Shown in pieces: positions 10,098 to 58,480 of a stretch of 64,000 bases of DNA (positions are counted from its first letter, which is position 1; the number at the start of each line of letters is the position of its first letter). The notes beneath the pieces are model-generated. The model did no database searches. It saw only the letters and a list, made by a program, of their open reading frames with translations, and was not told where the DNA came from. The stretch spans positions 124,001 through 188,000 of the IMG/VR virus record IMGVR_UViG_3300025030_000041, one strand, 5' to 3'. Made by a program: the position numbers and the translations under genes.

Positions 10098-10170
10098 TCC
10101 TCTGTAGCTCAGTTGGTAGAGCACATAACTGTTAATTATGTGGTCGGTGGATCATGCCCATCCAGAGGAG
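10098..10170 (+). tRNA. tRNA-Asn(GTT)
   Basis: acceptor TCCTCTG/CAGAGGA, D arm GCTC/GAGC, anticodon arm CATAA-CTGTTAA-TTATG, discriminator G; atypical T loop, no encoded CCA. Confidence 0.88.
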
Positions 10171-10188
10171 CATAAAAACTTTTATTTT

Positions 10189-12467: not shown

Positions 12468-12471
12468 TTAT

Positions 12472-32066: not shown

Positions 32067-32094
32067 AAATAAACGATTGATTATCAATTAATTA

Positions 32095-32169
32095 TATTTA
32101 GTTCAAAAATAAAGTACTTAAAAATTTTAATATATCAAACTTATTTCTTATTTTTGTATTAAATATAAC
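32095..32169 (+). promoter_or_regulatory. gene-less promoter module, copy 1 (upstream GTTA deleted)
   Basis: near-identical to 35873-35950 and 56282-56359; TATTTTTG at 32149 fits the Bacteroidota -7 box TAnnTTTG. Confidence 0.65.
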
Positions 32170-32263
32170 GGTTACAGCCTTATTTAGTGTGGGCAAAATT
32201 TTTGTTTTCTTTTTTCTCCTCACAGTTCGTAGTAATGTTGATACGAAGCACGGTTATTGCATG

Positions 32264-32471
32264 TAACGTTTTCGGGCTTGGAGATAGTTTTTAATGCGAT
32301 TTAAACAACAGAAATATGTTAGAAAAGATACAGAAAAAAGTAGAAGACCTTAGAATAAAGGTATATGCTGGACAGAACAACGAAGACACAGAAAAATACT
32401 TATATGACATTGAGCAAATGATATTCAAAGCGATGGACGAAGCATTAAAGATTTCTTCCAAGCCAGTGTTA
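32264..32471 (+). repeat. attC-like hairpin H1 (208 bp, contains start of ORF 32316)
   Basis: TAAC gttttcg GGCTTGGA ... TCCAAGCC agt GTTA. Confidence 0.75.
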
Positions 32472-32564
32472 GCAGATAGTTGCCAACATAATTGGCTGAA
32501 ATCTCATTCAAGGCATATGCTCTATTGTGGGAGCTGCGGTAAATATAAACCCGAAGGCTCTTAG
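32316..32564 (+). CDS. cassette protein crossing the GTTA junction, CxxxW...CxxC C-terminus
   Basis: junction at KPV|LADS; Zn-ribbon-like CQHNW..CGSCG. Confidence 0.65.
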   Translation: MLEKIQKKVEDLRIKVYAGQNNEDTEKYLYDIEQMIFKAMDEALKISSKPVLADSCQHNWLKSHSRHMLYCGSCGKYKPEGS

Positions 32565-32578
32565 TTGGCAATTTCTGC

Positions 32579-32658
32579 TAACGTTTTGCAGATAAGCGAA
32601 GGCACAAATAGCTTTGGCTTTGTGGGGTGGGATTTGGGCTTTTGCTTATGTGCTGTTA
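32579..32658 (+). repeat. attC-like hairpin H2 (80 bp)
   Basis: TAAC gttttgc AGATAAGCGAAGGC ... GCTTTTGCTTATGT gct GTTA. Confidence 0.85.
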
Positions 32659-32733
32659 TGTGTCTGTAAAATTTTTAATAATTATTTTTTGCGTGGGAAT
32701 TAATCAATTTAATCATTTAATAAAAACAACAAA

Positions 32734-33264
32734 ATGGAAACTTTAAACAAATTATTTACCGAACAAGATGTAGAAAATGTATCAGAAAAAATACTTTCAT
32801 CAACTAAACAAAAAATCAAAGACCAAATTGCTGATACCTTTTACGAAGAAATGTCAGATTGTTTGTTTGAACATTACAACAATTTCAAAGACGGAATGAA
32901 AGCCGATTTGCTAAAGGAAATTACAGACCAATATGTAAGCGACCCTGTAAATTATCAATTTAGAGAATTTAGAAATAAGCTATTTGCAGAGAACAAAGAT
33001 GTAATTCTAAAATCATTGACCGACCAAGCAATTTTTGAAACAGTTGAGAGTATCATTTTAGAATATACTCATAAACAACAAACTTTTGGATGGATGTGGA
33101 ATGAGGCTATCGCAAAAATTGTATTAGCAAATTGGGGTAAATTCAAAGATGATGAAAGAATACAAATGTCATTTGGTAGAGAAATTGATAATTTGAAAGG
33201 ACAAATACAAAGACTGCAAGAACGACTAAATGAAGTTTCATCAATAGTAGACGAAAATCATTAA
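32734..33264 (+). CDS. cassette hypothetical protein (helical, C-terminal coiled coil)
   Basis: 176-aa ORF inside module 32655-33315. Confidence 0.7.
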   Translation: METLNKLFTEQDVENVSEKILSSTKQKIKDQIADTFYEEMSDCLFEHYNNFKDGMKADLLKEITDQYVSDPVNYQFREFRNKLFAENKDVILKSLTDQAIFETVESIILEYTHKQQTFGWMWNEAIAKIVLANWGKFKDDERIQMSFGREIDNLKGQIQRLQERLNEVSSIVDENH

Positions 33265-33311
33265 ATCATTTGTGCGGTGGGAAAAATAATTATTAAAAAT
33301 TTTATTGCACA

Positions 33312-33401
33312 TAACGGTTGGGGGTTTGCGATAGTGCCGCTTACCACAAATTCCAATTTCAGCACTAAACTTCATAGCGGCATTTTGCAAACCCTGTGTT
33401 A
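33312..33401 (+). repeat. attC-like hairpin H3 (90 bp)
   Basis: TAAC ggttgg GGGTTTGCGATAGTGCCGCT ... AGCGGCATTTTGCAAACCC tgt GTTA. Confidence 0.85.
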
Positions 33402-33448
33402 TATGAAGTTTTATTTTTTGAAGGGCGGGCAACAAACAAATTATTAAA

Positions 33449-33718
33449 ATGGAAAAATTAACATCAATCAGATTGCAGCCAATGATTAACATCAATAAAC
33501 CCAATATGGATTTGTGGTGTCCGACATTAAATTTTGGAAGAAAGAAAGCAGGTAAATTCAAATTTCCAATAGTATTTAAAAGTATTAAACCTGCTGAAAA
33601 ACTTTACGATGAACTCCAAAATTTAATTGGCAAATCATTGGACGAAGTGAAAGCTGCATCTGAACCGCTTTATGATAAATACAAGAAGTACGATTATCGG
33701 GTGGGTGGTAAAAAATAA
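33449..33718 (+). CDS. cassette hypothetical protein
   Basis: 89-aa ORF in module 33398-33731. Confidence 0.65.
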   Translation: MEKLTSIRLQPMININKPNMDLWCPTLNFGRKKAGKFKFPIVFKSIKPAEKLYDELQNLIGKSLDEVKAASEPLYDKYKKYDYRVGGKK

Positions 33719-33727
33719 AATTTCCTA

Positions 33728-33841
33728 TAACGGTTTGGTATAAACGCAGTGTTTAACTAAACTTAATTTGAAATACAAAACTTAAAATTATGATAAAGAC
33801 ATTGATTGAAAAACTGGAAACATTACGTTTATACTTTGTTA
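33728..33841 (+). repeat. attC-like hairpin H4 (114 bp, contains start of ORF 33790)
   Basis: TAAC ggtttg GTATAAACGCAGTGTTT ... AAACATTACGTTTATAC ttt GTTA. Confidence 0.85.
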
Positions 33842-33996
33842 GTAAACGCTGTTTTAAAGTAACTTATAAAAGTAAATTGAATGGTAATATAGGAACAATT
33901 GGATATTATGGTAAATCAATTGATGGTGTTAAGAAAAAGTTTCAAAAAGAATTTGAAAATTCAATTATTTTAGACGTTTCTTACAATGTTTACTAA
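33790..33996 (+). CDS. cassette protein crossing the GTTA junction
   Basis: LRLYFV|SKR; stop codon is the TAA of the next TAAC. Confidence 0.65.
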   Translation: MIKTLIEKLETLRLYFVSKRCFKVTYKSKLNGNIGTIGYYGKSIDGVKKKFQKEFENSIILDVSYNVY

Positions 33997-34365
33997 CGTT
34001 ATCGGGCTTGGCGAAGGGCGATTATTAACCGAGAATGTTACTACGAAGAACTAAACAAAAATTTAATAAATAAAAAAAGCGATGGAAATAGATGTAAAAA
34101 AACTGATGCCAGAAGTAACAGATAATCATTTTGAAACGATAGACTTGTTACTTAAAGCAAACCAAGAAATAATTGAAGCATTACATATTATGCAATCCAG
34201 CATTGACAATTGGGATGATGCAGAATGTATGCAAATCAATAAAGACAGAATGATAAAATACTTTAATAGATTTAGTAAGGAGGTGTAGGCTTTTTATTTA
34301 TTAAATTTTTGAACCGAAATGATAATACGAAGCGATAAACTAAGCCTTTTGCCAAGCCTGTGTTA
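33994..34365 (+). repeat. attC-like hairpin H5 (372 bp, encloses ORF 34082-34288)
   Basis: TAAC gttatcg GGCTTGGCGAAGGGC ... GCCTTTTGCCAAGCC tgt GTTA. Confidence 0.8.
34082..34288 (+). CDS. hypothetical protein inside hairpin loop
   Basis: 68-aa ORF with A-rich leader. Confidence 0.6.
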   Translation: MEIDVKKLMPEVTDNHFETIDLLLKANQEIIEALHIMQSSIDNWDDAECMQINKDRMIKYFNRFSKEV

Positions 34366-34404
34366 TAAGGCGAAGCGAACCGTTGGCTTTTCGCCAATGG
34401 CTTA

Positions 34405-34533
34405 TAACGGTTTGCAGGTTTATTCAGTTGCGACTTTAAAAACGAAAAATTATGATAACAGAAAAACAATACTTAAAAGCGAAAAAGTTAATTGCAGACT
34501 ACGAAAGCCAGCAATTGAATAAACATGTTGTTA
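34405..34533 (+). repeat. attC-like hairpin H6 (129 bp, contains start of ORF 34452)
   Basis: TAAC ggtttgc AGGTTTATTCAGTTGC ... GCAATTGAATAAACAT gtt GTTA. Confidence 0.85.
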
Positions 34534-34622
34534 TAAGCAGTAAGCCGACCTCAAAAAAGAAGAAGGTGATTATAGATGCAGATAAATTTTCAAAGATGTG
34601 TGATGTTATTAAACGGATATAG
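34452..34622 (+). CDS. 56-aa cassette protein crossing the GTTA junction (not in ORF track)
   Basis: own translation MITEKQYLKAKKLIADYESQQLNKHVV|ISSKPTSKKKKVIIDADKFSKMCDVIKRI. Confidence 0.6.
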   Translation: MITEKQYLKAKKLIADYESQQLNKHVVISSKPTSKKKKVIIDADKFSKMCDVIKRI

Positions 34623-34634
34623 GCTTATTGCTGC

Positions 34635-34758
34635 TAACGGCTACAAACATGCTTAGTGCCTAATTAAATAGTAATTAACAATCAAAATAGTAGAATTATG
34701 AAAATAGCAAAAATGTTCAAAACTGCACTACAACAGGCATTAAGTATGTTTGTTGTTA
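34635..34758 (+). repeat. attC-like hairpin H7 (124 bp, contains start of ORF 34698)
   Basis: TAAC ggctac AAACATGCTTAGTGCCT ... AGGCATTAAGTATGTTT gtt GTTA. Confidence 0.85.
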
Positions 34759-34958
34759 GCAACCATGTTTACTGGGTTTTCCGTAAATTCAAACGACTTG
34801 AAACAATGGAAACTGCACCTGAAACATGGTTAATTGATGTGGATTTTGCAATCCATTTTGTAGAGCCATTTAAAAGTTATAAAGAGGCAAAGAAAGCAGT
34901 TGACTTTGCAAAACATTTACAACCTTGGCAAGAGTTTGTCATCTTACATGGTTGCTAA
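34698..34958 (+). CDS. cassette protein crossing the GTTA junction
   Basis: ALSMFVV|SNH; stop codon is the TAA of the next TAAT core. Confidence 0.65.
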   Translation: MKIAKMFKTALQQALSMFVVSNHVYWVFRKFKRLETMETAPETWLIDVDFAIHFVEPFKSYKEAKKAVDFAKHLQPWQEFVILHGC

Positions 34959-35045
34959 TGGTTGAGTGTATGAGTAGTGTGGCTTTGCACATACTTTCAA
35001 CTTACAGATAAACTTATTTAGCCACATTACTTATACACTTTGTTA
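34956..35045 (+). repeat. attC-like hairpin H8 (90 bp, TAAT core)
   Basis: TAAT ggttga GTGTATGAGTAGTGTGGCT ... AGCCACATTACTTATACAC ttt GTTA. Confidence 0.85.
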
Positions 35046-35067
35046 TAGGTATGTAAAATTTACGGAT

Positions 35068-35292
35068 ATGAAATTTATAAAAAAACAATTACTTAGAAGT
35101 ATAAACTTTGTTAAACGCTATTGGGAATTTATCGTTGTAGAATTTGCCGAAGATTTGGATTTAACTTGGTTTGGTAAATGGTTTTTAAGAACAATGATGT
35201 TTGGTTTATTTATGTGTTATATTCCAATAGTAATTGTTTTTATGCCACTATGGTTAATTATATTCAAATACGATGAAAGTTTAGGAATGTAG
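35068..35292 (+). CDS. cassette membrane protein (one TM)
   Basis: hydrophobic MMFGLFMCYIPIVIVFMPLWLIIF. Confidence 0.6.
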   Translation: MKFIKKQLLRSINFVKRYWEFIVVEFAEDLDLTWFGKWFLRTMMFGLFMCYIPIVIVFMPLWLIIFKYDESLGM

Positions 35293-35312
35293 GTAGTAAA
35301 TTTTATTACCTA

Positions 35313-35400
35313 TAACATTTAGGTGTATGAGAAGGTTTGCTTAGATGAACTTTCAAATTACCGACAATACTTATAGCAAACTTTCTTATACACCTTGTTA
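35313..35400 (+). repeat. attC-like hairpin H9 (88 bp; second copy at 55317)
   Basis: TAAC atttag GTGTATGAGAAGGTTTGCT ... AGCAAACTTTCTTATACAC ctt GTTA. Confidence 0.85.
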
Positions 35401-35460
35401 TAACCAGTACGATAAAATTAGTAGAAACTTAAATTGAAACATAAATAAAATTTTTTAAAT

Positions 35461-35781
35461 ATGAACGAATACAAATTAAAATTATTGGATTACATCTCAA
35501 AAAATTATGAGAATGTGGTAAAATCAGCACAAGGTGGTGAATATATTGAAATAGATTTAATACCAAACAGCCACGATGGATTACACGATTTACCCGAAAT
35601 TTTGGAATGTTGTGAAAAAAACGGAATTGATGTATATATGTTTTTACGTAGTTATCCAATGGATATTGGTGATGGTATTAGAATGGGAAGATATATGTAT
35701 TATATGCAAAAAACCACCAAGGCAATACTGGATGATTTAAAAAATTTTAACACAGAAACTCAAAACGAAGAACAAAAGTAA
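35461..35781 (+). CDS. cassette hypothetical protein
   Basis: 106-aa ORF in module 35397-35794. Confidence 0.65.
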   Translation: MNEYKLKLLDYISKNYENVVKSAQGGEYIEIDLIPNSHDGLHDLPEILECCEKNGIDVYMFLRSYPMDIGDGIRMGRYMYYMQKTTKAILDDLKNFNTETQNEEQK

Positions 35782-35790
35782 TATTGGTTA

Positions 35791-35876
35791 TAACGTTCTG
35801 TAAATATGATTAGTTGAAGAGTACTGTCATTTATAATTTAGTAGATTGATTATCAATTAATTATATTTACTTGTTA
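35791..35876 (+). repeat. attC-like hairpin H10 (86 bp; copies at 56199 and partial at 32075)
   Basis: TAAC gttct GTAAATATGATTAGTTGA ... TCAATTAATTATATTTAC tt GTTA. Confidence 0.85.
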
Positions 35877-35950
35877 TATTTAGTTCAAAAATAAAGTACT
35901 AAACGTGTTAATATATCAAAAATATTTCTTATTTTTGTATTAAATATAAC
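35873..35950 (+). promoter_or_regulatory. gene-less promoter module, copy 2
   Basis: GTTATATTTAGTTCAAAAATAA...TTATTTTTGTATTAAATATAAC; TAnnTTTG at 35930. Confidence 0.7.
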
Positions 35951-36070
35951 GGTTGAGAATATAAGTAGTAACCGATTTGAAACAAAAATGTTAAATTAAC
36001 GTATAATGATATTAAAAGGTAGTAACTTAAATAAACCACATAACTCGGTTATTACTTATATTCTTTGTTA
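35947..36070 (+). repeat. attC-like hairpin H11 (124 bp)
   Basis: TAAC ggttga GAATATAAGTAGTAACCGA ... TCGGTTATTACTTATATTC ttt GTTA. Confidence 0.85.
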
Positions 36071-36097
36071 TGTGTATGTAAAAATAAATTTATACCA

Positions 36098-36373
36098 ATG
36101 AAAAAAGAAATTAAAATAGGTGACAAGACGTTTGAATTTGAGAGTCCAAACATCTTAGATAAATCAACAACAGATATGATGAATGACTGGTGTAGATTAG
36201 TAGAACAACAAAAGAGTGATGAAGATGTTTGGACGGTGATACCTGAACTACCAGAATACAAATTCAAAAATCTTAAAATAGAGAGTAGTCCGTTTGAAAC
36301 AACAGAAGAAACTACTGAAATGACAGTAACTTTTAAGTATGATGATTTTGAATTTGATGATAAAAACTCATAA
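36098..36373 (+). CDS. cassette acidic hypothetical protein
   Basis: ATG at 36098 in module 36067-36395. Confidence 0.65.
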   Translation: MKKEIKIGDKTFEFESPNILDKSTTDMMNDWCRLVEQQKSDEDVWTVIPELPEYKFKNLKIESSPFETTEETTEMTVTFKYDDFEFDDKNS

Positions 36374-36391
36374 ATTTATTTTTATTACACA

Positions 36392-36474
36392 TAACGGTTG
36401 AGGGTTTATGCAGTTAAATTTTTACCAATAAAAAATAGAAATGAAAAAATTTTATTGCATTAAACCCTGTGTTA
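36392..36474 (+). repeat. attC-like hairpin H12 (83 bp)
   Basis: TAAC ggttga GGGTTTATGCAGTTAAATTTTT ... AAAAATTTTATTGCATTAAACCC tgt GTTA. Confidence 0.85.
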
Positions 36475-36552
36475 GCCGTCTGTATTTTTTAAACATTATT
36501 TTTTTAGGGAGGCATTTAATTAATCAATTTAATCATTAATAAAAACAAAAAA

Positions 36553-37110
36553 ATGGAACAAGTAAAAAAAGCATACGAAGAAATATTCAAAGCGTTAAAG
36601 AAACACAAGGACATTTGCGTTTTTGATGTAGAAGATTTGGAAAGAAAATCAAAAGTTCATCTTTTCGGGCTTACATTAAAAGAGGAATATGGCTTAAACA
36701 TAGACCCGAAGCAAGTTCAGGCGGTAAACTATTTTAAACCATCAGACCATACTTGGATTGGATGGTATGGCGAAAAGCATAATCGAACAATAAGCTGGAG
36801 CGTTGATGGCAGACAGCCCGAAGATGAACTTTTATTGCAAATCGGATTTCCAACAGGGGCTTATATTTTTGGCGAAGATTATGCAACCGATTTCTTTCAA
36901 AAGTTTTGGTTGGAATTGAAAACATACAAGCCCGATTATATTGATGAAGCGAACTGTTGCTTGTATTGGAACATCAAAAACGCAAAAGAGATTTTCAATT
37001 CATATAACGCTTTGCTAAAAAAATATTACGAACTAAATAAAGAGGATGCGAAACAAAGACTAATTGATAAAATGAAAAAGGAATTGGAGCAGTTAGAAAA
37101 ATCATCTTAA
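36553..37110 (+). CDS. cassette hypothetical protein
   Basis: 185-aa ORF in module 36471-37159; ISWSVDGRQP, FPTGAYIFG motifs. Confidence 0.7.
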   Translation: MEQVKKAYEEIFKALKKHKDICVFDVEDLERKSKVHLFGLTLKEEYGLNIDPKQVQAVNYFKPSDHTWIGWYGEKHNRTISWSVDGRQPEDELLLQIGFPTGAYIFGEDYATDFFQKFWLELKTYKPDYIDEANCCLYWNIKNAKEIFNSYNALLKKYYELNKEDAKQRLIDKMKKELEQLEKSS

Positions 37111-37283
37111 TCATTGGAGCGTTGGCAAAAAATAATGTTTAAAAAATATTGCGGCTAACTATTATATATATACAAGTATGCTTAATATATTGAATATGAA
37201 TACTAAATTCGATTGCATTATCAGACAATTTAAAAAAACTCAGATAACCCCTTAATACACATCAAATAAAACAATTTAAACTT

Positions 37284-52234: not shown

Positions 52235-54364
52235 ATGAAAAAAATTCTTTTATTTTTAAGTATTGGATATTTATCAATTCAATTTTCAAGTGCTCAGTTT
52301 GCAATAATAAAAACACAAACTAATGCAACATGTGTAGGAGATAGTAATGGTACAGCAAAAGTTTCAGTAAGTAGACGAACCCCTCCATATACTTACTCTT
52401 GGTCTAAAGACGGATCAACCGATGTTATTGGAATATCTGATAGTCTAAGTGGGTTAACTGCAGGGTCTTATAATTGCAATATTACAGACGTTGAGGGATT
52501 CCAAACTACCATCTCATTTACTATTACTTATAAAAGTCGTATTATTAGTACAACTGGGGGGTTTGGGTGTGAGACCATACTTCCATCATGTAGTTCTAGT
52601 AATACCGGGTCAGCATGTATACAAGTTTGGCAAGGAATTCCTCCATATACCTATTCTTGGAATACTACTCCTATACAGACAACTGAGACGGCCATTAATC
52701 TTTCCGAAGGATATTACACATATAGTATTACAGATTCACTTGGATGTTCAGATACTAATTCTTTTTATTTACCCTCAGCTATTCCTAACTTCAATCTTTC
52801 ATTCGCGGCAAGCCCACAAACTGGAGTATCACCTCTTGCTGTAGCTTTTAATAATAATACACCAAATATTGATAATTATACTTTTAAATGGTTTTTTGGT
52901 GATGGAAACTCTATTGATGATAGCAGTAGTACAGTATTTCATACATATCAATACTCAGGTAGCTATGATATAGCGCTAATTGCAATTGATAAAAATACTG
53001 GGTGTAGCGACACTCTTTTAAAAAATGGATTTATTTATACAACTGGAGCAGGATGTACACATAGCGCAACAATTACTACACTAAGTTCTACTACAGCGTG
53101 CCAAGGAGATACTATAATTCTTTCTGCAAATATAGACACATCTTTTACTTATAAATGGAATATAAACGGCACGGCTATTGATGGAGAAACTAATAATATA
53201 TTAAAAGCTACTCAAACTGGATATTATTCCGTAACTGTTTTAAAAGATAATTGTCCAGTTACCTCAAATGCTACACCAGTAACATTTAAAAATGGGCCAC
53301 CTATTCCTACTATTACTTCGGTAGGAACAATTGAGCCATGTATAGGTGGAGCAGTTACATTATCAGTTATGCCTATATATGGAATAAACTATTTATGGAA
53401 TACTGGAGATACTACTAATTCTATAACTACACATAATACTGGAATTTATTCAGTATCATTAGTAGATACTATATCAGGGTGTAGTAAAATGTCTGATATA
53501 TATAGACTTAGCACAACTCTATCTATACAAGATATTTGTATGGTAACATCAAATGATTCTTCAACTCATAATATTATTATTTGGGAAAAACCCATATCTA
53601 CTAATATAGATAGCTTTATAATTTATAGAGAAGTTGTAACGAATGTATATAATAAAATTGCAAGTATTAATTACAATTCATTAAGTGAATATCATGATTA
53701 TGACGCTAATCCAAATGTAACATCGTATAAGTATAAAATTGAAGTCATTGATACATGTGGCTCAGTGAGCCAATTAAGTAATTTTCATAACAGTATTCAT
53801 TTACAAAATTTAGGTAATGGTAATTTTCAGTGGACTCTATATAATATAGAAAATTCTATTAATCCTATCCAGTATTATATAATGTATCGTGACAATTATA
53901 GAAATGGCAGTTTTTTGCCAATAAGTAGTACTATTCCATCTGGAAATTCAACGTATACAGACTTAGAGTATTCAATGTATCCAGATGCTAAGTATAGAGT
54001 CGCAGCTTTATGGAATATTTCATGTATTCCTACTAAAAAAACTAATGAAATACCTCCAAATACTACGTATTCTAATATAAAAAATCAGGAAAGTATACCC
54101 ACTGGAATTTCATTTAATAATATAGATTTAAGTATCTCAGCTTACCCTAACCCTACAAATAATATAGTAAATATAGAAGGATTAGGACAGATTAAAAAAG
54201 GATCAATACAAATTATTAATATTACTGGACAAATCCTTTACACTGAGCATATTTCAAGCACTCCTAATATAAAACAAATAGATATTAGTAGTTACTATAA
54301 TGGATTTTATACTATAGTTATAGAAAATCATGGAATTAAAACCTATAAAAAAATAAAAAAATAA
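52235..54364 (+). CDS. T9SS-cargo-like surface protein: signal peptide, SprB-like repeats, PKD and Ig-like domains, type A C-terminal sorting domain
   Basis: MKKILLFLSIGYL signal; C..S.G.A....G.PPYTYSW repeats; WFFGDG...HTY...G.Y PKD; AYPNPTNNIVNI...IDISSYYNGFYTIVI...YKKIKK CTD. Confidence 0.85.
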   Translation: MKKILLFLSIGYLSIQFSSAQFAIIKTQTNATCVGDSNGTAKVSVSRRTPPYTYSWSKDGSTDVIGISDSLSGLTAGSYNCNITDVEGFQTTISFTITYKSRIISTTGGFGCETILPSCSSSNTGSACIQVWQGIPPYTYSWNTTPIQTTETAINLSEGYYTYSITDSLGCSDTNSFYLPSAIPNFNLSFAASPQTGVSPLAVAFNNNTPNIDNYTFKWFFGDGNSIDDSSSTVFHTYQYSGSYDIALIAIDKNTGCSDTLLKNGFIYTTGAGCTHSATITTLSSTTACQGDTIILSANIDTSFTYKWNINGTAIDGETNNILKATQTGYYSVTVLKDNCPVTSNATPVTFKNGPPIPTITSVGTIEPCIGGAVTLSVMPIYGINYLWNTGDTTNSITTHNTGIYSVSLVDTISGCSKMSDIYRLSTTLSIQDICMVTSNDSSTHNIIIWEKPISTNIDSFIIYREVVTNVYNKIASINYNSLSEYHDYDANPNVTSYKYKIEVIDTCGSVSQLSNFHNSIHLQNLGNGNFQWTLYNIENSINPIQYYIMYRDNYRNGSFLPISSTIPSGNSTYTDLEYSMYPDAKYRVAALWNISCIPTKKTNEIPPNTTYSNIKNQESIPTGISFNNIDLSISAYPNPTNNIVNIEGLGQIKKGSIQIINITGQILYTEHISSTPNIKQIDISSYYNGFYTIVIENHGIKTYKKIKK

Positions 54365-54423
54365 TTAAATATTAAATACTGCTAAATTACAATATACTTT
54401 TGTATTATTTTAATACAAGTATG

Positions 54424-54460
54424 TATATCAAAAACTTTTCTTATATTTGTATTAAATACT
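54424..54460 (+). promoter_or_regulatory. Bacteroidota-type promoter related to the promoter module
   Basis: TATATCAAAAACTTTTCTTATATTTGTATTAAATA; TATATTTG at 54442. Confidence 0.6.
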
Positions 54461-54492
54461 AAGTTTTATTTTTAACCTAAAACCTATATATC

Positions 54493-54906
54493 ATGACATT
54501 AGATGAATCTATAAAAGTACTTGAATTATTTAACAAGTGGAGAAGAGGTGAAGAGATACCTCAAGAAAACCCGACTAAAATTGGAATAGCAATTGATATT
54601 GTTTTAGATGAATTAAAAAAGTTAAGCCACTTTACGCATAATACAGTAGAATGTGATAAAAATAGGATAGGCCCTACTGATTTAATAGACTTAGAAAAAA
54701 ATGATTTAGTTAAATTATTAACAGTTACATTGCCATATTATTCAAAACTAAGTGAATCTGAAAAAGACCTAGTTGCTAAAGGTGGATTATTACCAAATGG
54801 TAGTACTACAGGAGAGCTATATTGGAATTATTGTAAGTTAGTTAGTATGGACCGGCTAGATTTATTTAAATTATATGTTATATGCAAAGACAGTTGGAAG
54901 AGATAA
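54493..54906 (+). CDS. hypothetical phage protein (possibly fused modules)
   Basis: N-terminal FNKWRRG...KIGIAID motif. Confidence 0.65.
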   Translation: MTLDESIKVLELFNKWRRGEEIPQENPTKIGIAIDIVLDELKKLSHFTHNTVECDKNRIGPTDLIDLEKNDLVKLLTVTLPYYSKLSESEKDLVAKGGLLPNGSTTGELYWNYCKLVSMDRLDLFKLYVICKDSWKR

Positions 54907-55046
54907 CCCCAAACTATTGATTATAAAAGAGCAATGACTCATTTTTTAAAAATTAATATTTGCATAGCTTTCATAGATTTTTAAAGTGCAGTCTAAACAT
55001 ATATACATAATAGCCAAAAATTAAATAGACCTAACAAACTTAGAAA

Positions 55047-55309
55047 ATGCAAACGAAAATTTGGATAACATATAAGCCTGATATTGACAAATTTCGGGAA
55101 TGGGATATTATGATGCCAACTCATTGGATAAAACTTCCTGATAATCCGAAAGAGTATTATTTTTTAGTTTATTAATAGAAACAAAAGAAGGAACAATGAA
55201 AGTATGTCGGGATGATTGGATTATCAAAGAACCATTTCAAACAGGCAATATATATATTTATCCTTGTAAAGACGATATTTTTCAAAGTACCTACTACGTC
55301 GTCTTATAA
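55047..55309 (+). pseudogene. two overlapping truncated gene remnants
   Basis: PTHWIKLPDNP (DUF551-like C-terminus) and TKEGTM...DWIIKE...YPCKDDIF.STY, in different frames, both lacking N-termini. Confidence 0.55.
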
Positions 55310-55316
55310 TTGGTAG

Positions 55317-55393
55317 TAATGATTTAGTGTATGAGAAGGATTGCTTAGATGAACTACCAAATTAACTACAGTTGTTGATAGCAAACTTTCTTG
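55317..55393 (+). repeat. truncated copy of hairpin H9
   Basis: GTGTATGAGAAGGATTGCTTAGATGAACT...AGCAAACTTTCTT, with terminal ATACAC..GTTA missing. Confidence 0.75.
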
Positions 55394-55414
55394 TAAAATT
55401 TAACTTTTTGAGCT

Positions 55415-55585
55415 ATGGATAGAATAAGAATTGAAATATTAGAATACAATTATTGGGAGCATTTTAAAGCACTAAAAGATATTGCATTGATTTTACCAAT
55501 TGAACACCCAAAAAGAAAGAAACTTGAAAAAGCTACAAACGAAATATTGAAAGAATTACACGAACTAAAGAGTGGTGGCAGTTAA
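55415..55585 (+). CDS. 56-aa cassette protein (not in ORF track)
   Basis: own translation MDRIRIEILEYNYWEHFKALKDIALILPIEHPKRKKLEKATNEILKELHELKSGGS. Confidence 0.6.
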   Translation: MDRIRIEILEYNYWEHFKALKDIALILPIEHPKRKKLEKATNEILKELHELKSGGS

Positions 55586-55598
55586 ATTTTATTTCTGC

Positions 55599-55722
55599 TA
55601 ACAGTTGGGGGTATATGTAGTGCGAGATTTTAAACACTAAACTTGACTTAACCCCAGAACTTAATTAGAAGTAGAAATGTTGAATAAATCGCTGAACCTC
55701 ACATTACATATACACCTTGTTA
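55599..55722 (+). repeat. attC-like hairpin H13 (124 bp)
   Basis: TAAC agttg GGGGTATATGTAGTGCGAG ... CTCACATTACATATACACC tt GTTA. Confidence 0.85.
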
Positions 55723-55772
55723 TACCCCGTATTTCGTGGGTTGGAAATTATAAACTTAATAAATAAATAAAA

Positions 55773-56003
55773 ATGAAAAATCTAATAGTAGAAAAACCAG
55801 AAGTAAAATTGAATGAAGAAGAAAAAGTAAATTCCTTCATTGAAAACTCAAAAAGTAATGATGGTGTTATCATTAAAATTCAAAATAATGTATATAGACA
55901 TTTAATAGATAAAGATGGTAAATGTTTTATTAAAAATATAACACCTATTTTTGAGTTTGATAGTTACGATGAATTGGAAACGATTTTAAAAACACAAATA
56001 TGA
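55773..56003 (+). CDS. cassette hypothetical protein
   Basis: 76-aa ORF in module 55719-56202. Confidence 0.6.
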   Translation: MKNLIVEKPEVKLNEEEKVNSFIENSKSNDGVIIKIQNNVYRHLIDKDGKCFIKNITPIFEFDSYDELETILKTQI

Positions 56004-56185
56004 TAACATTAATTTATTTAGGTATAGGGTGGTTAATTGGATTTTTAATAATTCAAACTTATCAAAAATTAGGTACTATAATAGTAGATACTAACGTAGA
56101 TAGTTATAGATTGAGAGTTAAATGTTTACTTTCATTTTTAGGTATTATAAATTTAATAGTAGTTCCTATTTTGAGGGTAAGGTAA
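56000..56185 (+). CDS. cassette two-TM membrane protein
   Basis: two hydrophobic segments; ATGA overlap with previous ORF. Confidence 0.55.
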   Translation: MITLIYLGIGWLIGFLIIQTYQKLGTIIVDTNVDSYRLRVKCLLSFLGIINLIVVPILRVR

Positions 56186-56198
56186 AAAATATTGTGTA

Positions 56199-56285
56199 TA
56201 ATGCCCCGTAAATATAATTTAGTTAAAGAGTACTGTCATTTATAATTTAGTAGATTGATTATCAATTAATTATATTTACCTGTTA
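56199..56285 (+). repeat. attC-like hairpin H14 (copy of H10)
   Basis: TAAT gcccc GTAAATATAATTTAGTT ... ATCAATTAATTATATTTAC ct GTTA; loop nearly identical to H10. Confidence 0.85.
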
Positions 56286-56359
56286 TATTTAGTTCAAAAA
56301 TAAAGTACTAAAAATGTTAATATATCAAAAACATTTCTTATTTTTGTATTAAATATAAT
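56282..56359 (+). promoter_or_regulatory. gene-less promoter module, copy 3 (no downstream + strand gene)
   Basis: near-identical to copy 2; TAnnTTTG at 56339. Confidence 0.7.
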
Positions 56360-56469
56360 ATATATATATTCAATTAACGTTATCATATTGATTATTAATA
56401 TATTTAGTTAAAAATATTTAAAGATTCATTTTAAAACTTTAAAAATAGAGACTGTCTTATTTAACCTAC

Positions 56470-57270
56470 TTACTTACTTACTTTTACAGTATCAGATAGT
56501 GCCATTATTTTATATAATTCAGTTAAATTAACACATAATCCGGGTGTACTATTCATTTTAGTATCAATAATTTCGGCCAGGGTTCTTAGTAAAATAAATA
56601 AAGGTTCTCCTAATACAGCTTTATACTGAGGAATATGCCCAATTTTAACAGTTGCTCCATCAGTCCAAATTTCATTTGATATATCATGAATACTACTTCC
56701 TGCTGTAGTATTAACTTGAGAACTACTATTAATTGTTATAATTCCTCCTTTTAATTCTATCATAGACTGAGTTCCTTTATGTTCTAATACTATAGAATTA
56801 TCTGGCAGAATATTAACTTTAGATTCATCTAATTCAAAAGTTAATCCTTTAGTCGTAGTATAATACATTTTTAGTTTTACATCGCCATCAAAACAAAATA
56901 TATGAGTTCCATCATACTCACTTTGTAATTGGTCTTTAACGTCTTTTGCTAATTCTTGGTGAAAATGATATTCTGGACAGTAAATATCTTGGTTATCAAA
57001 AGTAACTTTAAGAATAGCCCCATTTTTAGGTATTGAGATTTGTCCAGATAATCCGTCTTGCCCAAAAATATTACCTAAACGAGGATACGCCCATGGTAAA
57101 TCTTCAGTTGCTAAATTATCAAAAACGCCAAATACATTAATTTTACATCTTCCTTTTTTTTCAGGATCTTGATTATCTACAACCTTACCTAAAAAATCTC
57201 TACCTAAAAATTCATCTCTACCTAAATTATAAATATCTCTATTTTGGCCTATTTGCCTTGATAAACTCAT
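56470..57270 (-). CDS. baseplate central spike/hub, gp5/VgrG N-terminal OB-fold type, no lysozyme domain
   Basis: FLGKVVDNQDPEKKGRCKINVFG...DLPWAYP...SIPK.G..L.V.F. Confidence 0.8.
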   Translation of the reverse strand: MSLSRQIGQNRDIYNLGRDEFLGRDFLGKVVDNQDPEKKGRCKINVFGVFDNLATEDLPWAYPRLGNIFGQDGLSGQISIPKNGAILKVTFDNQDIYCPEYHFHQELAKDVKDQLQSEYDGTHIFCFDGDVKLKMYYTTTKGLTFELDESKVNILPDNSIVLEHKGTQSMIELKGGIITINSSSQVNTTAGSSIHDISNEIWTDGATVKIGHIPQYKAVLGEPLFILLRTLAEIIDTKMNSTPGLCVNLTELYKIMALSDTVKVSK

Positions 57271-57304
57271 AATACTAAACTCTTAATTTATTTGTAAACA
57301 TTTC

Positions 57305-58480
57305 TTATCGTTGAGGTTTCTTATCATATACATTTCCTAACTCAGTTCTTATATTAGGTGGTATAAATTTATTAATATCATCATAAACTTTCTTATTAGT
57401 TAATGGTAAGTTAAGAAGCAAGGGTTTTCCTTTATATACATTACCCATTGGAGTTAATTTAGATTCTAACTTATTTACAACTCCACCTATTAATTCTGCT
57501 GGAGCTCTTCCTATTTTACCTAATACATTATCTTTAATAATGTCAGCTTTTTTAATTGCATTACTAAAAATTCCAAAATTATCTCCAGTATAAGCTGTTT
57601 TTAATTTATTAGTTTCGTCTAATCTAATTTTATCTACATTATACTCATCTTGTGTTTGCGGGGCATGCCCGACTCCTCTTATCATTGTTGTATCAAAATA
57701 TGGAAATTTATTTTTTTCATACCACTTATGTACTTTAATTTTAAATTTGCCATTAGCCATTTTAGGATCTGCATTATCAACAGAATCTCCACCTGGAAAA
57801 CTTTCACTAAAATCAAATTCACATTGAGTAAATACAAATTCTATATAGTTTAATTGATTTACTATACTTTCTAATCGTAAAAGCCGTTCCTCATCAGTTA
57901 AAGCATTCATTTTTACATTATCTAATGCATCCAATGTTGCTCTAATATTTCTAAATTCACAAACTTGAATACTCATCTCAAAATATCTTAAATTTTCTGG
58001 AACTACTTCTCGCATATATACAGTGTCATAAATTGCGCTTCTATATAAATTTGCTAAAAATGCCATCCGCAAATCAACTGATTCTAAACAATTAAAAGTT
58101 AAAACTGCAGTTTGAAGCGGCTTACTTATATCAGTACTCAATTTCCATACTTCATTTAAGCCTTCAATAGACTGAAAATACCAAGGAGTAGTATCCTGTA
58201 TCCAACTTATAATATCTCTAAACTTATCTAAATAATCAGACTCCTTTTTATATCCTAATAAACTTAAATATTCAATTGCGCCATACCCATCACCTGGACG
58301 AGTAAATAACGGTGAATTCATTAATTTGCTATCATATTGTAAAAAAGAATTTAAATTAAATTGAACATTAAATGAAAGAAAGGTTGGATCTTCAATTCCA
58401 TATTTACTTTCAAATAAAAATCCTCTTCTAAAATTTTGAAATTCATTAGTATTTACAAAACTTCTTAGATTAGTAGCCAT
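57305..58480 (-). CDS. putative baseplate/tube-initiator structural protein
   Basis: EDPTFLSF, PWYFQSIEGL, CLESVDLR, REVVPENLRYF; baseplate cluster context. Confidence 0.45.
   Translation of the reverse strand: MATNLRSFVNTNEFQNFRRGFLFESKYGIEDPTFLSFNVQFNLNSFLQYDSKLMNSPLFTRPGDGYGAIEYLSLLGYKKESDYLDKFRDIISWIQDTTPWYFQSIEGLNEVWKLSTDISKPLQTAVLTFNCLESVDLRMAFLANLYRSAIYDTVYMREVVPENLRYFEMSIQVCEFRNIRATLDALDNVKMNALTDEERLLRLESIVNQLNYIEFVFTQCEFDFSESFPGGDSVDNADPKMANGKFKIKVHKWYEKNKFPYFDTTMIRGVGHAPQTQDEYNVDKIRLDETNKLKTAYTGDNFGIFSNAIKKADIIKDNVLGKIGRAPAELIGGVVNKLESKLTPMGNVYKGKPLLLNLPLTNKKVYDDINKFIPPNIRTELGNVYDKKPQR

What the first reader, a model, noticed from the sequence alone, without database searches (positions are those of the whole stretch)
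54420..56359. Second, decaying cassette array 18 kb away that shares parts with array 1
Seen: copies of H9 (right end and module start deleted at about 55393), H10 and the promoter module, one new hairpin (H13), a two-gene module and truncated gene remnants. It interrupts the virion gene region next to the T9SS-cargo gene. Inference: units move between loci, and decayed arrays leave clusters of small orphan genes, a possible general source of jumbo phage ORFans.
Basis: partly seen in the sequence, partly recalled or inferred. Interest (0 to 1): 0.66.

Follow-up and report, generated by a model that had tools for sequence, protein, structure and literature searches.

The report
Decayed integron-like cassette array in phage
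The 2-kb stretch is a worn-out, recombinase-less outpost of a phage-encoded, integron-like gene-cassette system (hairpin sites, promoter cassettes and two Xer-like recombinases elsewhere in the same 246-kb genome) that also occurs in many related environmental phages and may explain how big phages shuffle small unknown genes.

Summary
H13 is not new: a copy lies at genome 68.1 kb. The H10+promoter block is a genome-wide repeat with at least 13 copies, not a part shared only with array 1.

The units are cassettes bounded by TAAC. Each starts with an imperfect hairpin (TAAC-G, 5-nt bubble, about 20-bp variable stem, loop, T-GTTA) and ends with ATK-N5-TAAC. One 237-nt cassette occurs three times at 99% identity with breakpoints exactly at TAAC.

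Two Xer/IntI-like tyrosine recombinases sit at array ends behind a conserved TAAC|TAYTATATRTA junction. Array 1 ends in a 19-codon remnant of such a gene. Recombinase relatives in 56 of 80 IMG/VR loci carry the same hairpins upstream, and in one trio a 960-nt TAAC-bounded block has moved next to that junction.

Region 2 is a decayed, recombinase-less array. Only one hairpin is intact. H9 and H10 score at background, three TAAC sites read TAAT or TAAG, one gene is fragmented, and the last promoter has no gene behind it.

Best reading: a phage integron analogue, a new variant of a known kind.

The parts
54352..54466 (+). Degenerate promoter-like palindromic module. The junction reads CTAAG instead of TAAC.
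   Evidence: It is 70% identical over 111 nt to genome 46527-46636, and its 35-nt core is 86-94% identical to the other promoter copies. Inverted arms lie at 54409-54456.
54493..54906 (+). ORF137, a cassette-like gene without its own hairpin. It is a true ORFan.
   Evidence: No Pfam or PHROG hit. No paralogue in the genome. Only itself was found among 5.8 billion protein clusters.
54949..55003 (+). Upstream-region motif (AGATTTTTAAAGTGCAnnCTAAAC) also found, inverted, at genome 11983-12037.
   Evidence: 82% identical over 55 nt. In the 13-kb locus the motif lies just upstream of a 442-aa gene.
55047..55309 (+). Broken gene: ORF42 (55047-55175) and ORF37 (55196-55309) lie in different frames.
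   Evidence: ORF37 matches only positions 92-121 of the 300-position phrog_419 profile, E 3.7e-8.
55317..55395 (+). H9 remnant. The junction has mutated to TAAT and the end of the right arm plus GTTA is deleted after about 55393.
   Evidence: 85.5% identical over 69 nt to 35323-35390. It folds at -5.8 kcal/mol with z -0.05, against -17.3 kcal/mol and z -5.9 for the intact copy. It scores 10.3 bits against the model, versus 62.9.
55415..55585 (+). ORF56, a cassette gene. It is followed by the canonical cassette end ATTTCTGCTAAC (55591-55602).
   Evidence: No family hit and no paralogue.
55599..55722 (+). H13, the only intact hairpin site in region 2: TAAC, 5-nt bubble, stem, 65-nt loop, TT-GTTA.
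   Evidence: The model gives 103 bits on the + strand and 13 bits on the - strand, but H13 was a training sequence. It is 77% identical to genome 68122-68302. Its stem is weakened: the DNA fold has z -1.1.
55773..56185 (+). Two-gene cassette payload: ORF76 and ORF61, which overlap at ATGA.
   Evidence: There were no family hits apart from a weak PHROG match for ORF76, E 0.0055. No paralogues.
56191..56285 (+). H10 copy, the hairpin of the promoter cassette. The preceding junction reads ATTGTGTATAAT, that is TAAT rather than TAAC.
   Evidence: Part of a block 92% identical over 171 nt to 35780-35949. It scores 12.5 bits against the model, versus 33.9 for the array-1 copy.
56282..56358 (+). Promoter-like palindromic module (GTTATATTTAGTTCAAAAATAA, 34 nt, TTATTTTTGTATTAAATATAAT). 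No gene lies downstream on this strand.
   Evidence: The core 36-mer occurs 17 times in the genome. The next feature is the end of the convergent baseplate gene.
56355..56445 (+). Degenerate attI-like array terminus (TAAT|ATATATATATATTCAATTAAC...) with no recombinase gene behind it.
   Evidence: 94% identical over 85 nt to an inverted copy at genome 13122-13206, where it follows ...GCTAAC|TATTATATATATTC. The same TAAC|TAYTATATRTA junction precedes the recombinase genes.
32075..37247 (+). Array 1: two promoter cassettes, ten intact hairpin sites and about 12 small genes. It ends in an attI-like junction (TAAC at 37156-37159) and a 19-codon remnant of a recombinase gene (37145-37247).
   Evidence: Sequence. 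The model gives ten hits with E below 1e-4, all on the + strand. The remnant is 91% identical over 103 nt to genome 77290-77392, which is the region upstream of Int1 plus its first codons.
34405..34639 (+). Reference mobile cassette: hairpin plus a 56-aa gene. It is present three times in the genome.
   Evidence: 99% identical to genome 75296-75532 and to 234575-234808 on the reverse strand. Identity begins at TAAC and ends at ...ATTGCTGCTAAC, and the flanks are unrelated.

Best explanation
Region 2 (about 54365-56469) is a small, recombinase-less and partly eroded array of a phage-borne integron-like cassette system.

**How the system is built**
- In this 246-kb genome about 34 hairpin sites lie in about 8 clusters.
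- A cassette is the DNA from one TAAC to the next.
- It opens with an imperfect hairpin on the gene-sense strand: TAAC-G, a bubble of about 5 nt against 1-2 nt, a stem of about 20 bp that is variable but co-varying and carries fixed G.T wobbles, a loop of 30-70 nt or more, then T-GTTA.
- It then carries a payload: one or two small genes, or a promoter.
- It closes with ATK-N5-TAAC.
- Two Xer/XerA-like tyrosine recombinases, each placed behind a conserved TAAC|TAYTATATRTA junction (attI-like) at the end of an array, are the likely enzymes.

**Likely mechanism (inferred)**
- The recombinases cut at or next to TAAC of the folded sense strand, which has the geometry of the attC bottom strand.
- They excise cassettes and reinsert them at other hairpin sites or at the attI-like junction.

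**What is shown**
- The anatomy, the co-variation and the strand asymmetry of the hairpins.
- TAAC-exact breakpoints of moved units.
- The linkage of recombinase and arrays across many phages.
- The erosion of region 2.

**What is inferred**
- That these recombinases catalyse the moves.
- That single-stranded folding is the substrate.
- That the 36-nt module is an early promoter. It contains TAnnTTTG, the Bacteroidota -7 element as I recall it.

In region 2 most sites can probably no longer recombine, because their junctions read TAAT or TAAG and the arms are truncated. Its genes are therefore probably stranded there.
For: **Unit boundaries**
- Three 99%-identical copies of a 237-nt cassette have breakpoints exactly at TAAC on both sides, in unrelated flanks. 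One copy sits directly before the junction in front of Int2.
- Ends of BLAST matches between arrays pile up at TAAC. 26% of left ends fall at -4 to -6 and 20% of right ends at -3 to +2, against 4.3% of random positions within 4 nt.
- In L063 and L064 a 960-nt block that is 99.9% identical to one in L083 lies next to the attI-like junction. In L083 it lies inside the array. Both ends are at TAAC, and the rest of the loci are 97-100% identical.

**Enzymes**
- PF00589 hits at genome 77653-78120 (+) and 233753-234181 (-), both at array ends.
- The catalytic motifs are visible in the sequences.
- The best families are XerA/integron integrase, below their cut-offs.
- Array 1 ends in a copy of the Int1 upstream region and its start.

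**Conservation**
- 56 of 80 IMG/VR loci that encode relatives at 53-65% identity carry 198 such hairpins. The hairpins lie upstream of the recombinase and in the same orientation. They include the H9 and H13 stem families.
- The TAAC|TAYTATATRTA junction lies about 45-50 nt before the recombinase ATG in nearly all of these loci.
- 74% of array bases lie in ORFs on the recombinase strand, and the median spacing between sites is 410 nt.

**attC-like structure**
- G follows TAAC in 168 of 178 unique hairpins, as reported for attC bottom strands.
- The bubble is asymmetric.
- All four Watson-Crick pair types occur at nearly every stem position.
- 19 of 25 RNAalifold pairs show compensatory changes.
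- G:T pairs number 273 against 1 A:C.
- Sense-strand model scores far exceed antisense scores, for example 62.9 against 17.9 bits.
- More distant homologues at 38-45% identity in bacteria and archaea sit beside hairpins of the complementary, canonical attC top-strand form.

**Decay of region 2**.
Against: - No experiment and no read-level evidence of excision. The only public runs are assembled contigs, and they showed no informative joints.
- The recombinases lack the insertion specific to integron integrases. About 46 residues are missing relative to VchIntIA. They score below every NCBIfam cut-off, so they could be ordinary Xer-like or lysogeny integrases.
- Relatives were found through the recombinase, so the co-occurrence of hairpins and recombinase could reflect shared ancestry of one phage clade rather than a functional link.
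- The G.T asymmetry, the sense-strand orientation and the start codons inside 75 of 178 loops fit an RNA-level role equally well.
- Most match ends between arrays are not at TAAC.
- The hairpin statistics were computed on elements preselected for pairing in the first 14 stem positions. Only positions 15-18 and the RNAalifold and model results are independent of that choice.
- Gene orientation is opposite to that of classical integron cassettes.
Confidence: 0.62

Rival explanations
1. PeSL-like regulatory cassettes. On this reading the promoter modules and stem-loops are transcription or RNA elements of the early-gene regions. Units reshuffle by general recombination between these repeated regulatory sequences, as in the T4-type phages RB49 and phi1. 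The tyrosine recombinases play no part.
For: - The parts shared between region 2 and other loci are non-coding promoter and hairpin segments, while the genes are unique.
- The promoter block is a high-copy repeat of 120-175 nt, long enough for homologous exchange.
- H13 shares its hairpin and 5' leader up to the ATG with the 68-kb copy, but the genes behind them differ.
- PeSLs are known to mediate modular shuffling and to form mini-circles in hyperplastic regions rich in ORFans (PMC2839356; PMC4122927).
Against: - The stems differ in sequence between sites, so little homology is available. Yet breakpoints fall within the 4-5 nt TAAC in three independent contexts and in the L063/L083 block.
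- No terminator-like stem-loop followed by a T-run was found.
- The recombinase, the attI-like junction and the hairpins keep a conserved order and orientation across many phages.
- An attC-like bubble and the AAC-G signature are not needed for a terminator.
Confidence: 0.2
2. The hairpins are primarily RNA structures. They would act as 5'-leader stabilisers, processing sites or translation-initiation platforms for each small gene. Their TAAC/GTTA ends would be conserved for an RNA-binding or RNA-cleaving protein. DNA mobility would be incidental.
For: - The structure is markedly better on the sense (transcribed) strand: 273 G:U-type pairs against 1 A:C.
- A G.U pair at stem position 14 is kept in 42 of 45 sequences.
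- 75 of 178 elements hold the start codon of the downstream ORF in their loop.
- The first hairpin starts just after the promoter-like core, so it would form the 5' end of the transcript.
Against: - An RNA role cannot by itself explain DNA breakpoints exactly at TAAC. It also does not explain the conserved junction in front of the recombinase genes or the recombinase remnant at the end of array 1.
- No Rfam family matches.
- The two roles are not mutually exclusive.
Confidence: 0.12
3. Single-strand transposition by an HUH (IS200/IS605-type or REP/RAYT-type) enzyme that recognises subterminal hairpins and cuts at a tetranucleotide, here TAAC.
For: - The units are bounded by the same tetranucleotide on both sides, with a hairpin just inside the left end.
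- Insertion 3' of a TAAC that ends another unit would give tandem arrays.
- This resemblance rests on my own knowledge of IS608.
Against: - No Y1 transposase (PF01797) was found anywhere in the genome, which is about 92% complete.
- No serine recombinase was found either.
- Two tyrosine recombinases are present at array ends instead.
- TnpB and Rep families were not searched.
Confidence: 0.03
4. The similarity is trivial: a single segmental duplication of part of array 1, or chance matches in AT-rich DNA.
For: - The genome is 26% GC, and short AT-rich matches are common.
- The bare ATK-N5-TAAC motif occurs at the frequency expected by chance genome-wide.
Against: - The shared segments map to different loci, orders and orientations.
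- E-values reach 1e-59.
- Simulated genomes give 0-2 hairpin elements per strand, against 20 in total on the two strands of the real genome.
- The model hits have E values down to 1e-21 and occur only in arrays.
Confidence: 0.01

Closest known systems
Integrons (intI, attI, attC cassette arrays), including CALINs (clusters of attC sites lacking an integrase) reported in some phages (Qi et al. 2023, PMC9892861)
   Same: - A tyrosine recombinase lies next to a specific junction site and an array of small, mostly unknown genes.
- The genes are separated by imperfect hairpins in which only AAC...GTT is conserved.
- There is an unpaired central bubble, and a G follows AAC on one strand (PMC2727003).
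- The loop is variable. Cassettes are about 400 nt.
- Unit boundaries lie at the AAC/GTT box.
- After reverse-complementing, the layout is the canonical one: the recombinase is divergent from the top strand of the array.
- Recombinase-less arrays occur elsewhere in the same genome, as CALINs do.
   Different: - The recombinase lacks the insertion specific to IntI.
- 163 of 178 stems pair ungapped over at least 16 of 18 positions, so there are no extrahelical bases. Fixed G.T wobbles are present instead.
- Genes are read from the strand equivalent to the attC bottom strand, so the hairpin precedes its gene and often contains its start codon.
- Promoters are themselves cassettes, and there is no single Pc promoter.
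- There are several arrays and two recombinases in one virus genome.
- The phage cases published so far are bacterial integron fragments or two- to four-site CALINs found with IntegronFinder, without a phage-clade recombinase.
PeSLs (promoter-early stem-loops) of T4-type phages (Arbiol et al. 2010, PMC2839356; Comeau et al. 2014, PMC4122927)
   Same: - Repeated promoter-plus-stem-loop modules flank small ORFan genes in hyperplastic regions of a large phage genome.
- They are proposed to drive modular shuffling.
   Different: - PeSLs are sigma-70-type promoters with terminator stem-loops, and they recombine by homology.
- Here the stems vary in sequence and no terminator-like stem-loop followed by a T-run was found.
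- Breakpoints are at a fixed tetranucleotide.
- Dedicated recombinase genes are linked to the arrays.
Xer recombination on folded single-stranded DNA (CTX-phi attP(+) hairpin with XerCD) and archaeal XerA
   Same: - The closest solved structures and families are XerA and XerC-like.
- From my own knowledge, CTX-phi uses a folded hairpin with an unpaired central region as the Xer substrate.
   Different: - CTX-phi integrates a whole phage genome at the host dif site using host enzymes.
- Here a phage-encoded enzyme would move sub-genomic cassettes within and between phage genomes.
- No dif-like 11-6-11 site was identified.

Membership tests
Integron integrase (IntI) | Tyrosine-recombinase fold with the catalytic R..K..HxxR..H..Y residues | tested here: met
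   PF00589 scores 132.9 and 122.7 bits, over its cut-off. The motifs GLRVSE, GKGRKDR, HxLRHS, GHSS and IYTH are visible in P0001 and P0002.
Integron integrase (IntI) | IntI-specific additional domain: an insertion in the catalytic domain that contacts the extrahelical bases of attC | tested here: not met
   Against VchIntIA (2A3V), residues 21-179 align with 18-179 and residues 204-260 with 250-306. Thus 25 residues stand where IntI has 71. TIGR02249 matches in two pieces and scores 170.7 and 135.2 bits against a cut-off of 265.
Integron (platform) | Recombinase gene adjacent to a primary site (attI) followed by an array of cassettes | tested here: met
   The TAAC|TAYTATATRTA junction lies about 45-50 nt upstream of the recombinase ATG in this genome and in nearly all viral loci examined, with hairpin arrays beyond it. 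Function of the junction as attI is inferred.
Integron (platform) | Promoterless cassettes expressed from a common promoter Pc, with each ORF followed by its attC | tested here: not met
   ORFs lie on the recombinase strand, 74% against 14%, with the hairpin upstream of each ORF. Promoter-like modules are themselves TAAC-bounded cassettes present in 17 copies.
attC recombination site | Imperfect palindrome with conserved AAC...GTT (R''/R' boxes), variable L boxes and a variable terminal loop, 57-141 bp long | tested here: met
   In 178 unique elements TAAC and GTTA are invariant by construction of the scan, but the flanking G (168 of 178) and T (172 of 178) were not imposed. Stems co-vary. Lengths peak at 80-100 nt and 120-140 nt.
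attC recombination site | Unpaired central spacer between the R and L boxes | tested here: met
   The left spacer is 5 nt in 120 of 178 elements and the right spacer is 1-2 nt in 149 of 178. RNAalifold places an internal loop after the R box.
attC recombination site | Two or three extrahelical bases in the L stem that set strand choice | tested here: not met
   163 of 178 stems pair ungapped over at least 16 of 18 positions. Asymmetry comes instead from G.T wobbles, 273 against 1 A:C.
attC recombination site | Recognition by the curated attC covariance model (IntegronFinder, HattCI) and recombination by an IntI | not testable with these tools
   The attC model is not in Rfam, where no family matched.
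PeSL (T4-type promoter-early stem-loop) | Strong sigma-70-like promoter joined to a stem-loop that terminates transcription | tested here: not met
   Sigma-70-like matches are at the chance level, 17 found against 17.7 expected, and there are 0 terminator-like sites in 54300-56500. The promoter-like core has a Bacteroidota-type TAnnTTTG element instead, which is my own knowledge and was not tested.
IS200/IS605 or REP/RAYT elements | HUH Y1 transposase encoded in the genome | tested here: not met
   PF01797 gave no match at E up to 1 in the whole 246-kb record.

The most novel reading that the evidence does not exclude
A widespread, virus-borne analogue of the integron. On this reading a compact Xer/XerA-like recombinase without the IntI domain recombines folded hairpin sites that have no extrahelical bases and encode strand choice by fixed G.T wobbles and an asymmetric bubble. 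It would move gene cassettes and promoter cassettes among several arrays within a jumbo-phage genome and between phages. The result would be a dedicated engine for acquiring and shuffling small accessory (ORFan) genes in viruses. Eroded, recombinase-less arrays such as region 2 would be its fossils.
Probability: 0.5. Interest if true: 0.9.

Novelty: new variant of a known kind. Interest (0 to 1): 0.8.

Why it matters
Integrons are regarded as bacterial and archaeal devices. In phages, the literature I could search reports only captured fragments of bacterial integrons or tiny clusters of attC sites.

A native phage system would give a concrete, testable mechanism for the clusters of small unknown genes that fill large phage genomes. 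The system seen here has its own recombinase clade, its own site architecture and promoter cassettes, and it appears in dozens of environmental viral contigs. It would mirror in phages the role of chromosomal integrons as stores of defence genes in bacteria.

It would also show that recombination on hairpin sites does not need the IntI-specific domain. That bears on how integron integrases arose from Xer-like enzymes.

Region 2 adds the life-cycle end point. Once the junction sites mutate, the cassettes are stranded in the middle of the virion gene region.

Tried and rejected
- **Rfam.** Both arrays were searched at a permissive threshold. Only chance miRNA-level hits appeared.
- **Relatives of this phage.** I looked for close relatives to test whether region 2 is an insertion. 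The megablast search of the phage collection found nothing. The 391-aa neighbouring protein found nothing in viral contigs. The baseplate-hub protein found only the same contig in metagenomes, plus one 29%-identity hit. The promoter pattern found only fragments of the same phage at 100% identity. The insertion claim therefore could not be tested by synteny.
- **Reads.** All 13 runs are kept as assembled contigs. Laying four of them on 52600-58400 showed assemblies breaking at the repeats and low-depth identical fragments in other groundwater and soil samples. There were no joints indicating excision. The 'goes back' and 'skips' joints are explained by the repeated promoter block and the 13-kb locus. 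This is no evidence against mobility, because contigs drop rare variants.
- **Protein level.** Region-2 ORFs have no paralogues in the genome and no homologues in the 83 related loci searched. ORF137 has no relative in the large protein collection. Gene function is therefore left open.
- **First hairpin scan.** A loose TAAC...GTTA fold scan gave 307 mostly spurious hits and was replaced by stem-anchored scans.
- **Other enzymes.** There is no HUH transposase and no serine recombinase. The helicase upstream of array 1 (30417-32066) is not a recombinase.
- **Model search with default filters.** It missed the minus-strand and short-loop copies. The affected stretches were rerun with filters off. 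Four 20-kb stretches (L170, L173, L176, L177) were searched with default filters only.


Full report
**Setting**

The window is bases 124001-188000 of a single 246,115-bp viral contig with 26% GC. CheckV estimates it to be about 92% complete. It comes from groundwater metagenomes.

Region 2 lies between a + strand gene for a protein with SprB, PKD and T9SS C-terminal sorting domains (52235-54364) and the end of a - strand baseplate-hub gene (56470-57270).

**Checking the observation**

Repeat finding and BLAST against the whole genome confirm the following:
- A degenerate promoter module at 54412-54466.
- An H9 copy at 55317-55395. It is 85.5% identical over 69 nt to 35323-35390, and its right end is cut off after about 55393.
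- Hairpin H13 at 55599-55722.
- A two-gene module at 55773-56185.
- The H10+promoter block at 56185-56358, 92% identical over 171 nt to array 1.

ORF37 (55196-55309) matches only positions 92-121 of a 300-position PHROG profile. It lies in a different frame from ORF42 just upstream, so this is a broken gene.

Two details are wrong:
- H13 is not new. It is 77% identical over 181 nt to genome 68122-68302.
- The H10+promoter block is one of at least 13 copies across the genome, and its 36-nt core occurs 17 times.

Region 2 also ends in an 85-nt segment that is 94% identical to an inverted copy at 13.1 kb. A 55-nt segment at 54949-55003 matches 12.0 kb, but in the opposite relative order.

The shared pieces thus come from at least four loci and are not collinear. 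None of the six ORFs has a paralogue in the genome. ORF137 has no relative among 5.8 billion protein clusters.

**What the units are**

Array 1 (32.1-37.2 kb) is a run of small + strand genes. Each gene is preceded by an imperfect inverted repeat.

The key result is a 237-nt segment (34403-34639) holding a hairpin and a 56-aa gene. It occurs three times in the genome at 99% identity. In a three-way alignment the identity begins exactly at TAAC and ends exactly at ...ATTGCTGCTAAC, with unrelated sequence outside.

The unit is therefore TAAC to TAAC:
- The hairpin belongs to the 5' end of its cassette.
- The promoter module has the same format: TAAC, the H10 hairpin, a palindromic promoter-like core, then ATTAAATATAAC. 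It is a cassette whose payload is a promoter.
- In several cassettes the loop contains the start codon of the gene. In one, the two arms (33994 and 34330) enclose a whole 68-aa gene.

**Enzymes**

The genome has no Y1 (HUH) transposase and no serine recombinase. It has two tyrosine recombinases:
- Int1 (271 aa) at genome 77341-78156, on the + strand, at the end of the 75-77 kb array.
- Int2 (267 aa) at 233720-234523, on the - strand, at the end of the 234-239 kb array.

They are 51% identical to each other. Int2 is closer (up to 65%) to recombinases of other viral contigs than to Int1.

The best families are XerA/integron integrase, then integron integrase and XerC/D. All score below their cut-offs. 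The best solved structures are archaeal XerA-like proteins. Against VchIntIA the alignment skips about 46 residues, so the IntI-specific insertion is absent.

Each recombinase gene is preceded, about 48 nt before the ATG, by a cassette end followed by an AT-rich junction...CCGCTAAC|TATTATATATATAC for Int1. Array 1 ends with the same junction plus a 19-codon remnant of an Int1-like gene (37145-37247, 91% identical to 77290-77392). Region 2 and the 13-kb locus end with the junction alone. In region 2 it has degenerated to TAAT|ATATATATATATTC.

**Beyond this genome**

A search with Int2 found 201 relatives in IMG/VR, of which 80 loci at 53-65% identity were examined.
- 56 of the 80 loci carry 198 TAAC-stem-GTTA elements. 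They lie upstream of the recombinase and are in the same orientation.
- They include stems of the H9 and H13 families and of the hairpins at 32586 and 35956 in the window.
- Nearly all loci show TAAC|TAYTATATRTA at about 45-50 nt before the recombinase start.
- Within arrays, 74% of bases lie in ORFs on the recombinase strand against 14% on the other strand. The median spacing between sites is 410 nt.

In bacterial and archaeal genomes only three metagenome-assembled contigs hold close relatives (58% identity or more). The remaining homologues, at 38-45% identity, carry few such hairpins. Those hairpins lie downstream of the recombinase and have the complementary form, TAAC-A...gAAC(C)-GTTA. 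That is how canonical attC top strands look.

The reverse complement of the phage hairpin has this canonical form. The phage gene-sense strand therefore corresponds to the attC bottom strand. After reverse-complementing, the layout is the classical one, with the recombinase divergent from the array. The genes, however, are read the other way.

**Evidence for movement at TAAC**

Between arrays, ends of BLAST matches pile up at TAAC. 26% of left ends fall at -4 to -6 and 20% of right ends at -3 to +2, against 4.3% of random positions within 4 nt. Most ends lie elsewhere, as expected from divergence.

The cleanest case is L063 and L064 against L083:
- The recombinase and 3.8 kb downstream are 97% identical, and another 1.8 kb is 100% identical.
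- A 960-nt block (99.9% identical, TAAC to TAAC) lies inside the array in L083.
- In L063 and L064 the same block lies directly against the TAAC|TATTTTATAT junction.

That is the outcome expected of excision followed by reinsertion at a primary site. In this genome, one of the three copies of the 237-nt cassette likewise abuts the junction in front of Int2.

**Structure of the sites**

In 178 unique elements:
- The left spacer is 5 nt in 120 elements and the right spacer is 1-2 nt in 149.
- G follows TAAC in 168 and T precedes GTTA in 172.
- Nearly every stem position shows all four Watson-Crick pair types.
- 86% of cells are Watson-Crick pairs, against 33% when partner arms are shuffled. This figure is inflated by preselection on positions 1-14. 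Positions 15-18 were not preselected and are still 81-94% paired.

An independent MAFFT/RNAalifold analysis of 45 sequences gives the same structure. 19 of 25 pairs show compensatory changes. A G.U pair next to the R box is kept in 44 of 45 sequences, and another at stem position 14 in 42 of 45.

G:T pairs outnumber A:C by 273 to 1. Covariance-model scores are far higher on the sense strand, 62.9 against 17.9 bits for H9. 163 of 178 stems pair without gaps, so there are no extrahelical bases. This fits the absence of the IntI insertion that reads such bases in integrons; that link is an inference.

The literature on attC sites describes conserved AAC/GTT boxes, an unpaired central spacer, a G after AAC on the bottom strand, cleavage within AAC, and a variable loop (PMC2727003).

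**Census and decay**

The covariance model R1 was run over the window with filters off. It finds ten sites in array 1 and only H13 in region 2 at E below 1e-4, all on the + strand. Nothing significant appears elsewhere in the 64 kb. Genome-wide there are about 34 sites in about 8 clusters, each co-oriented with the local genes.

In region 2:
- The H9 remnant scores 10.3 bits, against 62.9 for the intact copy. It folds at -5.8 kcal/mol with z about 0, against -17.3 kcal/mol and z -5.9.
- The H10 copy scores 12.5 bits, against 33.9.
- H13 itself is weakened (z -1.1).
- The junctions before H9, before H10 and after the last promoter read TAAT. The junction after the first promoter reads CTAAG.
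- The last promoter module faces the end of the convergent baseplate gene, with no gene to drive.

'Decaying' is therefore a fair description.

**Mechanism and rivals**

The best-supported reading is a phage-borne integron analogue in which region 2 is an inactive, CALIN-like remnant. Shown: the anatomy, the co-variation, the strand asymmetry, TAAC-exact breakpoints, the linkage of recombinase, junction and array across many phages, and the erosion. Inferred: that Int1 and Int2 catalyse the moves, that the folded sense strand is the substrate, and that the 36-nt core is a promoter.

The main rival is a PeSL-like system of regulatory cassettes shuffled by homology (PMC2839356). It explains why only non-coding parts are shared. 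It does not explain breakpoints confined to a tetranucleotide between stems of different sequence. It does not explain the conserved recombinase-junction architecture. No terminator-like sites were found.

An RNA-level role for the hairpins fits the sense-strand G.U pattern and the start codons in loops (75 of 178). It may coexist with a DNA role, but it cannot produce DNA breakpoints.

Relatives were found through the recombinase, so part of the co-occurrence could be shared ancestry. No read-level or experimental evidence for excision was obtainable.

**Novelty**

Published phage cases are captured bacterial integrons or clusters of two to four attC sites found with IntegronFinder (PMC9892861). 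Keyword searches found no description of a phage-clade recombinase with its own hairpin arrays. These searches cover open-access text only.

I file the system as a new variant of a known kind. It works like an integron, but it fails three defining tests: the IntI insertion, extrahelical bases, and promoterless cassettes with the ORF before the attC site.

Region 2 is one example. No other eroded cores were detectable in this window.

Noticed in passing
window 33373, 33757, 34050, 55640 (hairpin loops); 54970-54995; genome 11990-12020 (-): A recurring motif, (A)GCACTAAACTT, sits in many hairpin loops just upstream of the gene start. A longer version, AGATTTTTAAAGTGCAnnCTAAAC, lies upstream of genes outside hairpins. 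It is found in 40 of 178 loops. It may be a second promoter class or a leader signal.
   Followed up: partly
178 hairpins in L007-L089 and in the genome arrays: In 75 of 178 elements the start codon of an ORF of 40 aa or more lies inside the hairpin loop, and the right arm is coding sequence. In array 1 the arms at 33994 and 34330 enclose a whole 68-aa gene. This is unexplained under a simple attC analogy.
   Followed up: partly
L130 (Desulfitobacterium sp. Sab5, 11727-16323), L098 and L091 (Nitrospirae MAGs), L113, L140 (Altarchaeum MAG): Bacterial and archaeal homologues of the phage recombinase (38-45% identity, same length, so apparently also without the IntI insertion) have canonical-looking attC hairpins downstream, of the form TAACA...AACGTTA. 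This suggests that integron-like platforms without the insertion exist outside phages.
   Followed up: no
window 28000-28470, 40700-41050, 43330-43700, 44340-44950, and many other genome sites: Families of 63-nt tandem repeats and repeated segments of about 640 nt (75-88% identical) lie inside large - strand genes at more than 15 places in the genome. They probably encode repeat-domain structural or fibre proteins.
   Followed up: no
window 52235-54364: A phage gene encodes a protein with an SprB repeat, PKD domains and a T9SS C-terminal sorting domain. It also shows weak similarity to Hoc-like head decoration proteins. This points to a Bacteroidota host.
   Followed up: partly
window 32075-32122 versus 35844-35904 and 56253-56313: The first promoter cassette of array 1 lacks 13 nt (CTTGTTATATTTA) between direct TATATTTA repeats. 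The deletion removes the GTTA of the H10 hairpin, a small slippage-type lesion in an otherwise intact array.
   Followed up: no
window 14001-15000; window 10098-10171: A 1-kb stretch with 36.5% GC stands in a 26% GC genome at the point where the coding strand switches. A tRNA-Asn(GTT) gene lies nearby.
   Followed up: no
L003 1-327 versus genome 245669-245995: A segment of about 330 nt near genome 126.5 kb (window about 2500-2830) is 95% identical to one near the right end of the contig.
   Followed up: no
runs X5-X8 laid on window 52600-58400: Short contigs identical to parts of this phage occur at low depth in groundwater and soil samples from other studies. One contig in X5 carries an intact H9 right arm (…ATACACCTTGTTATGTG) in another context.
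   Followed up: partly
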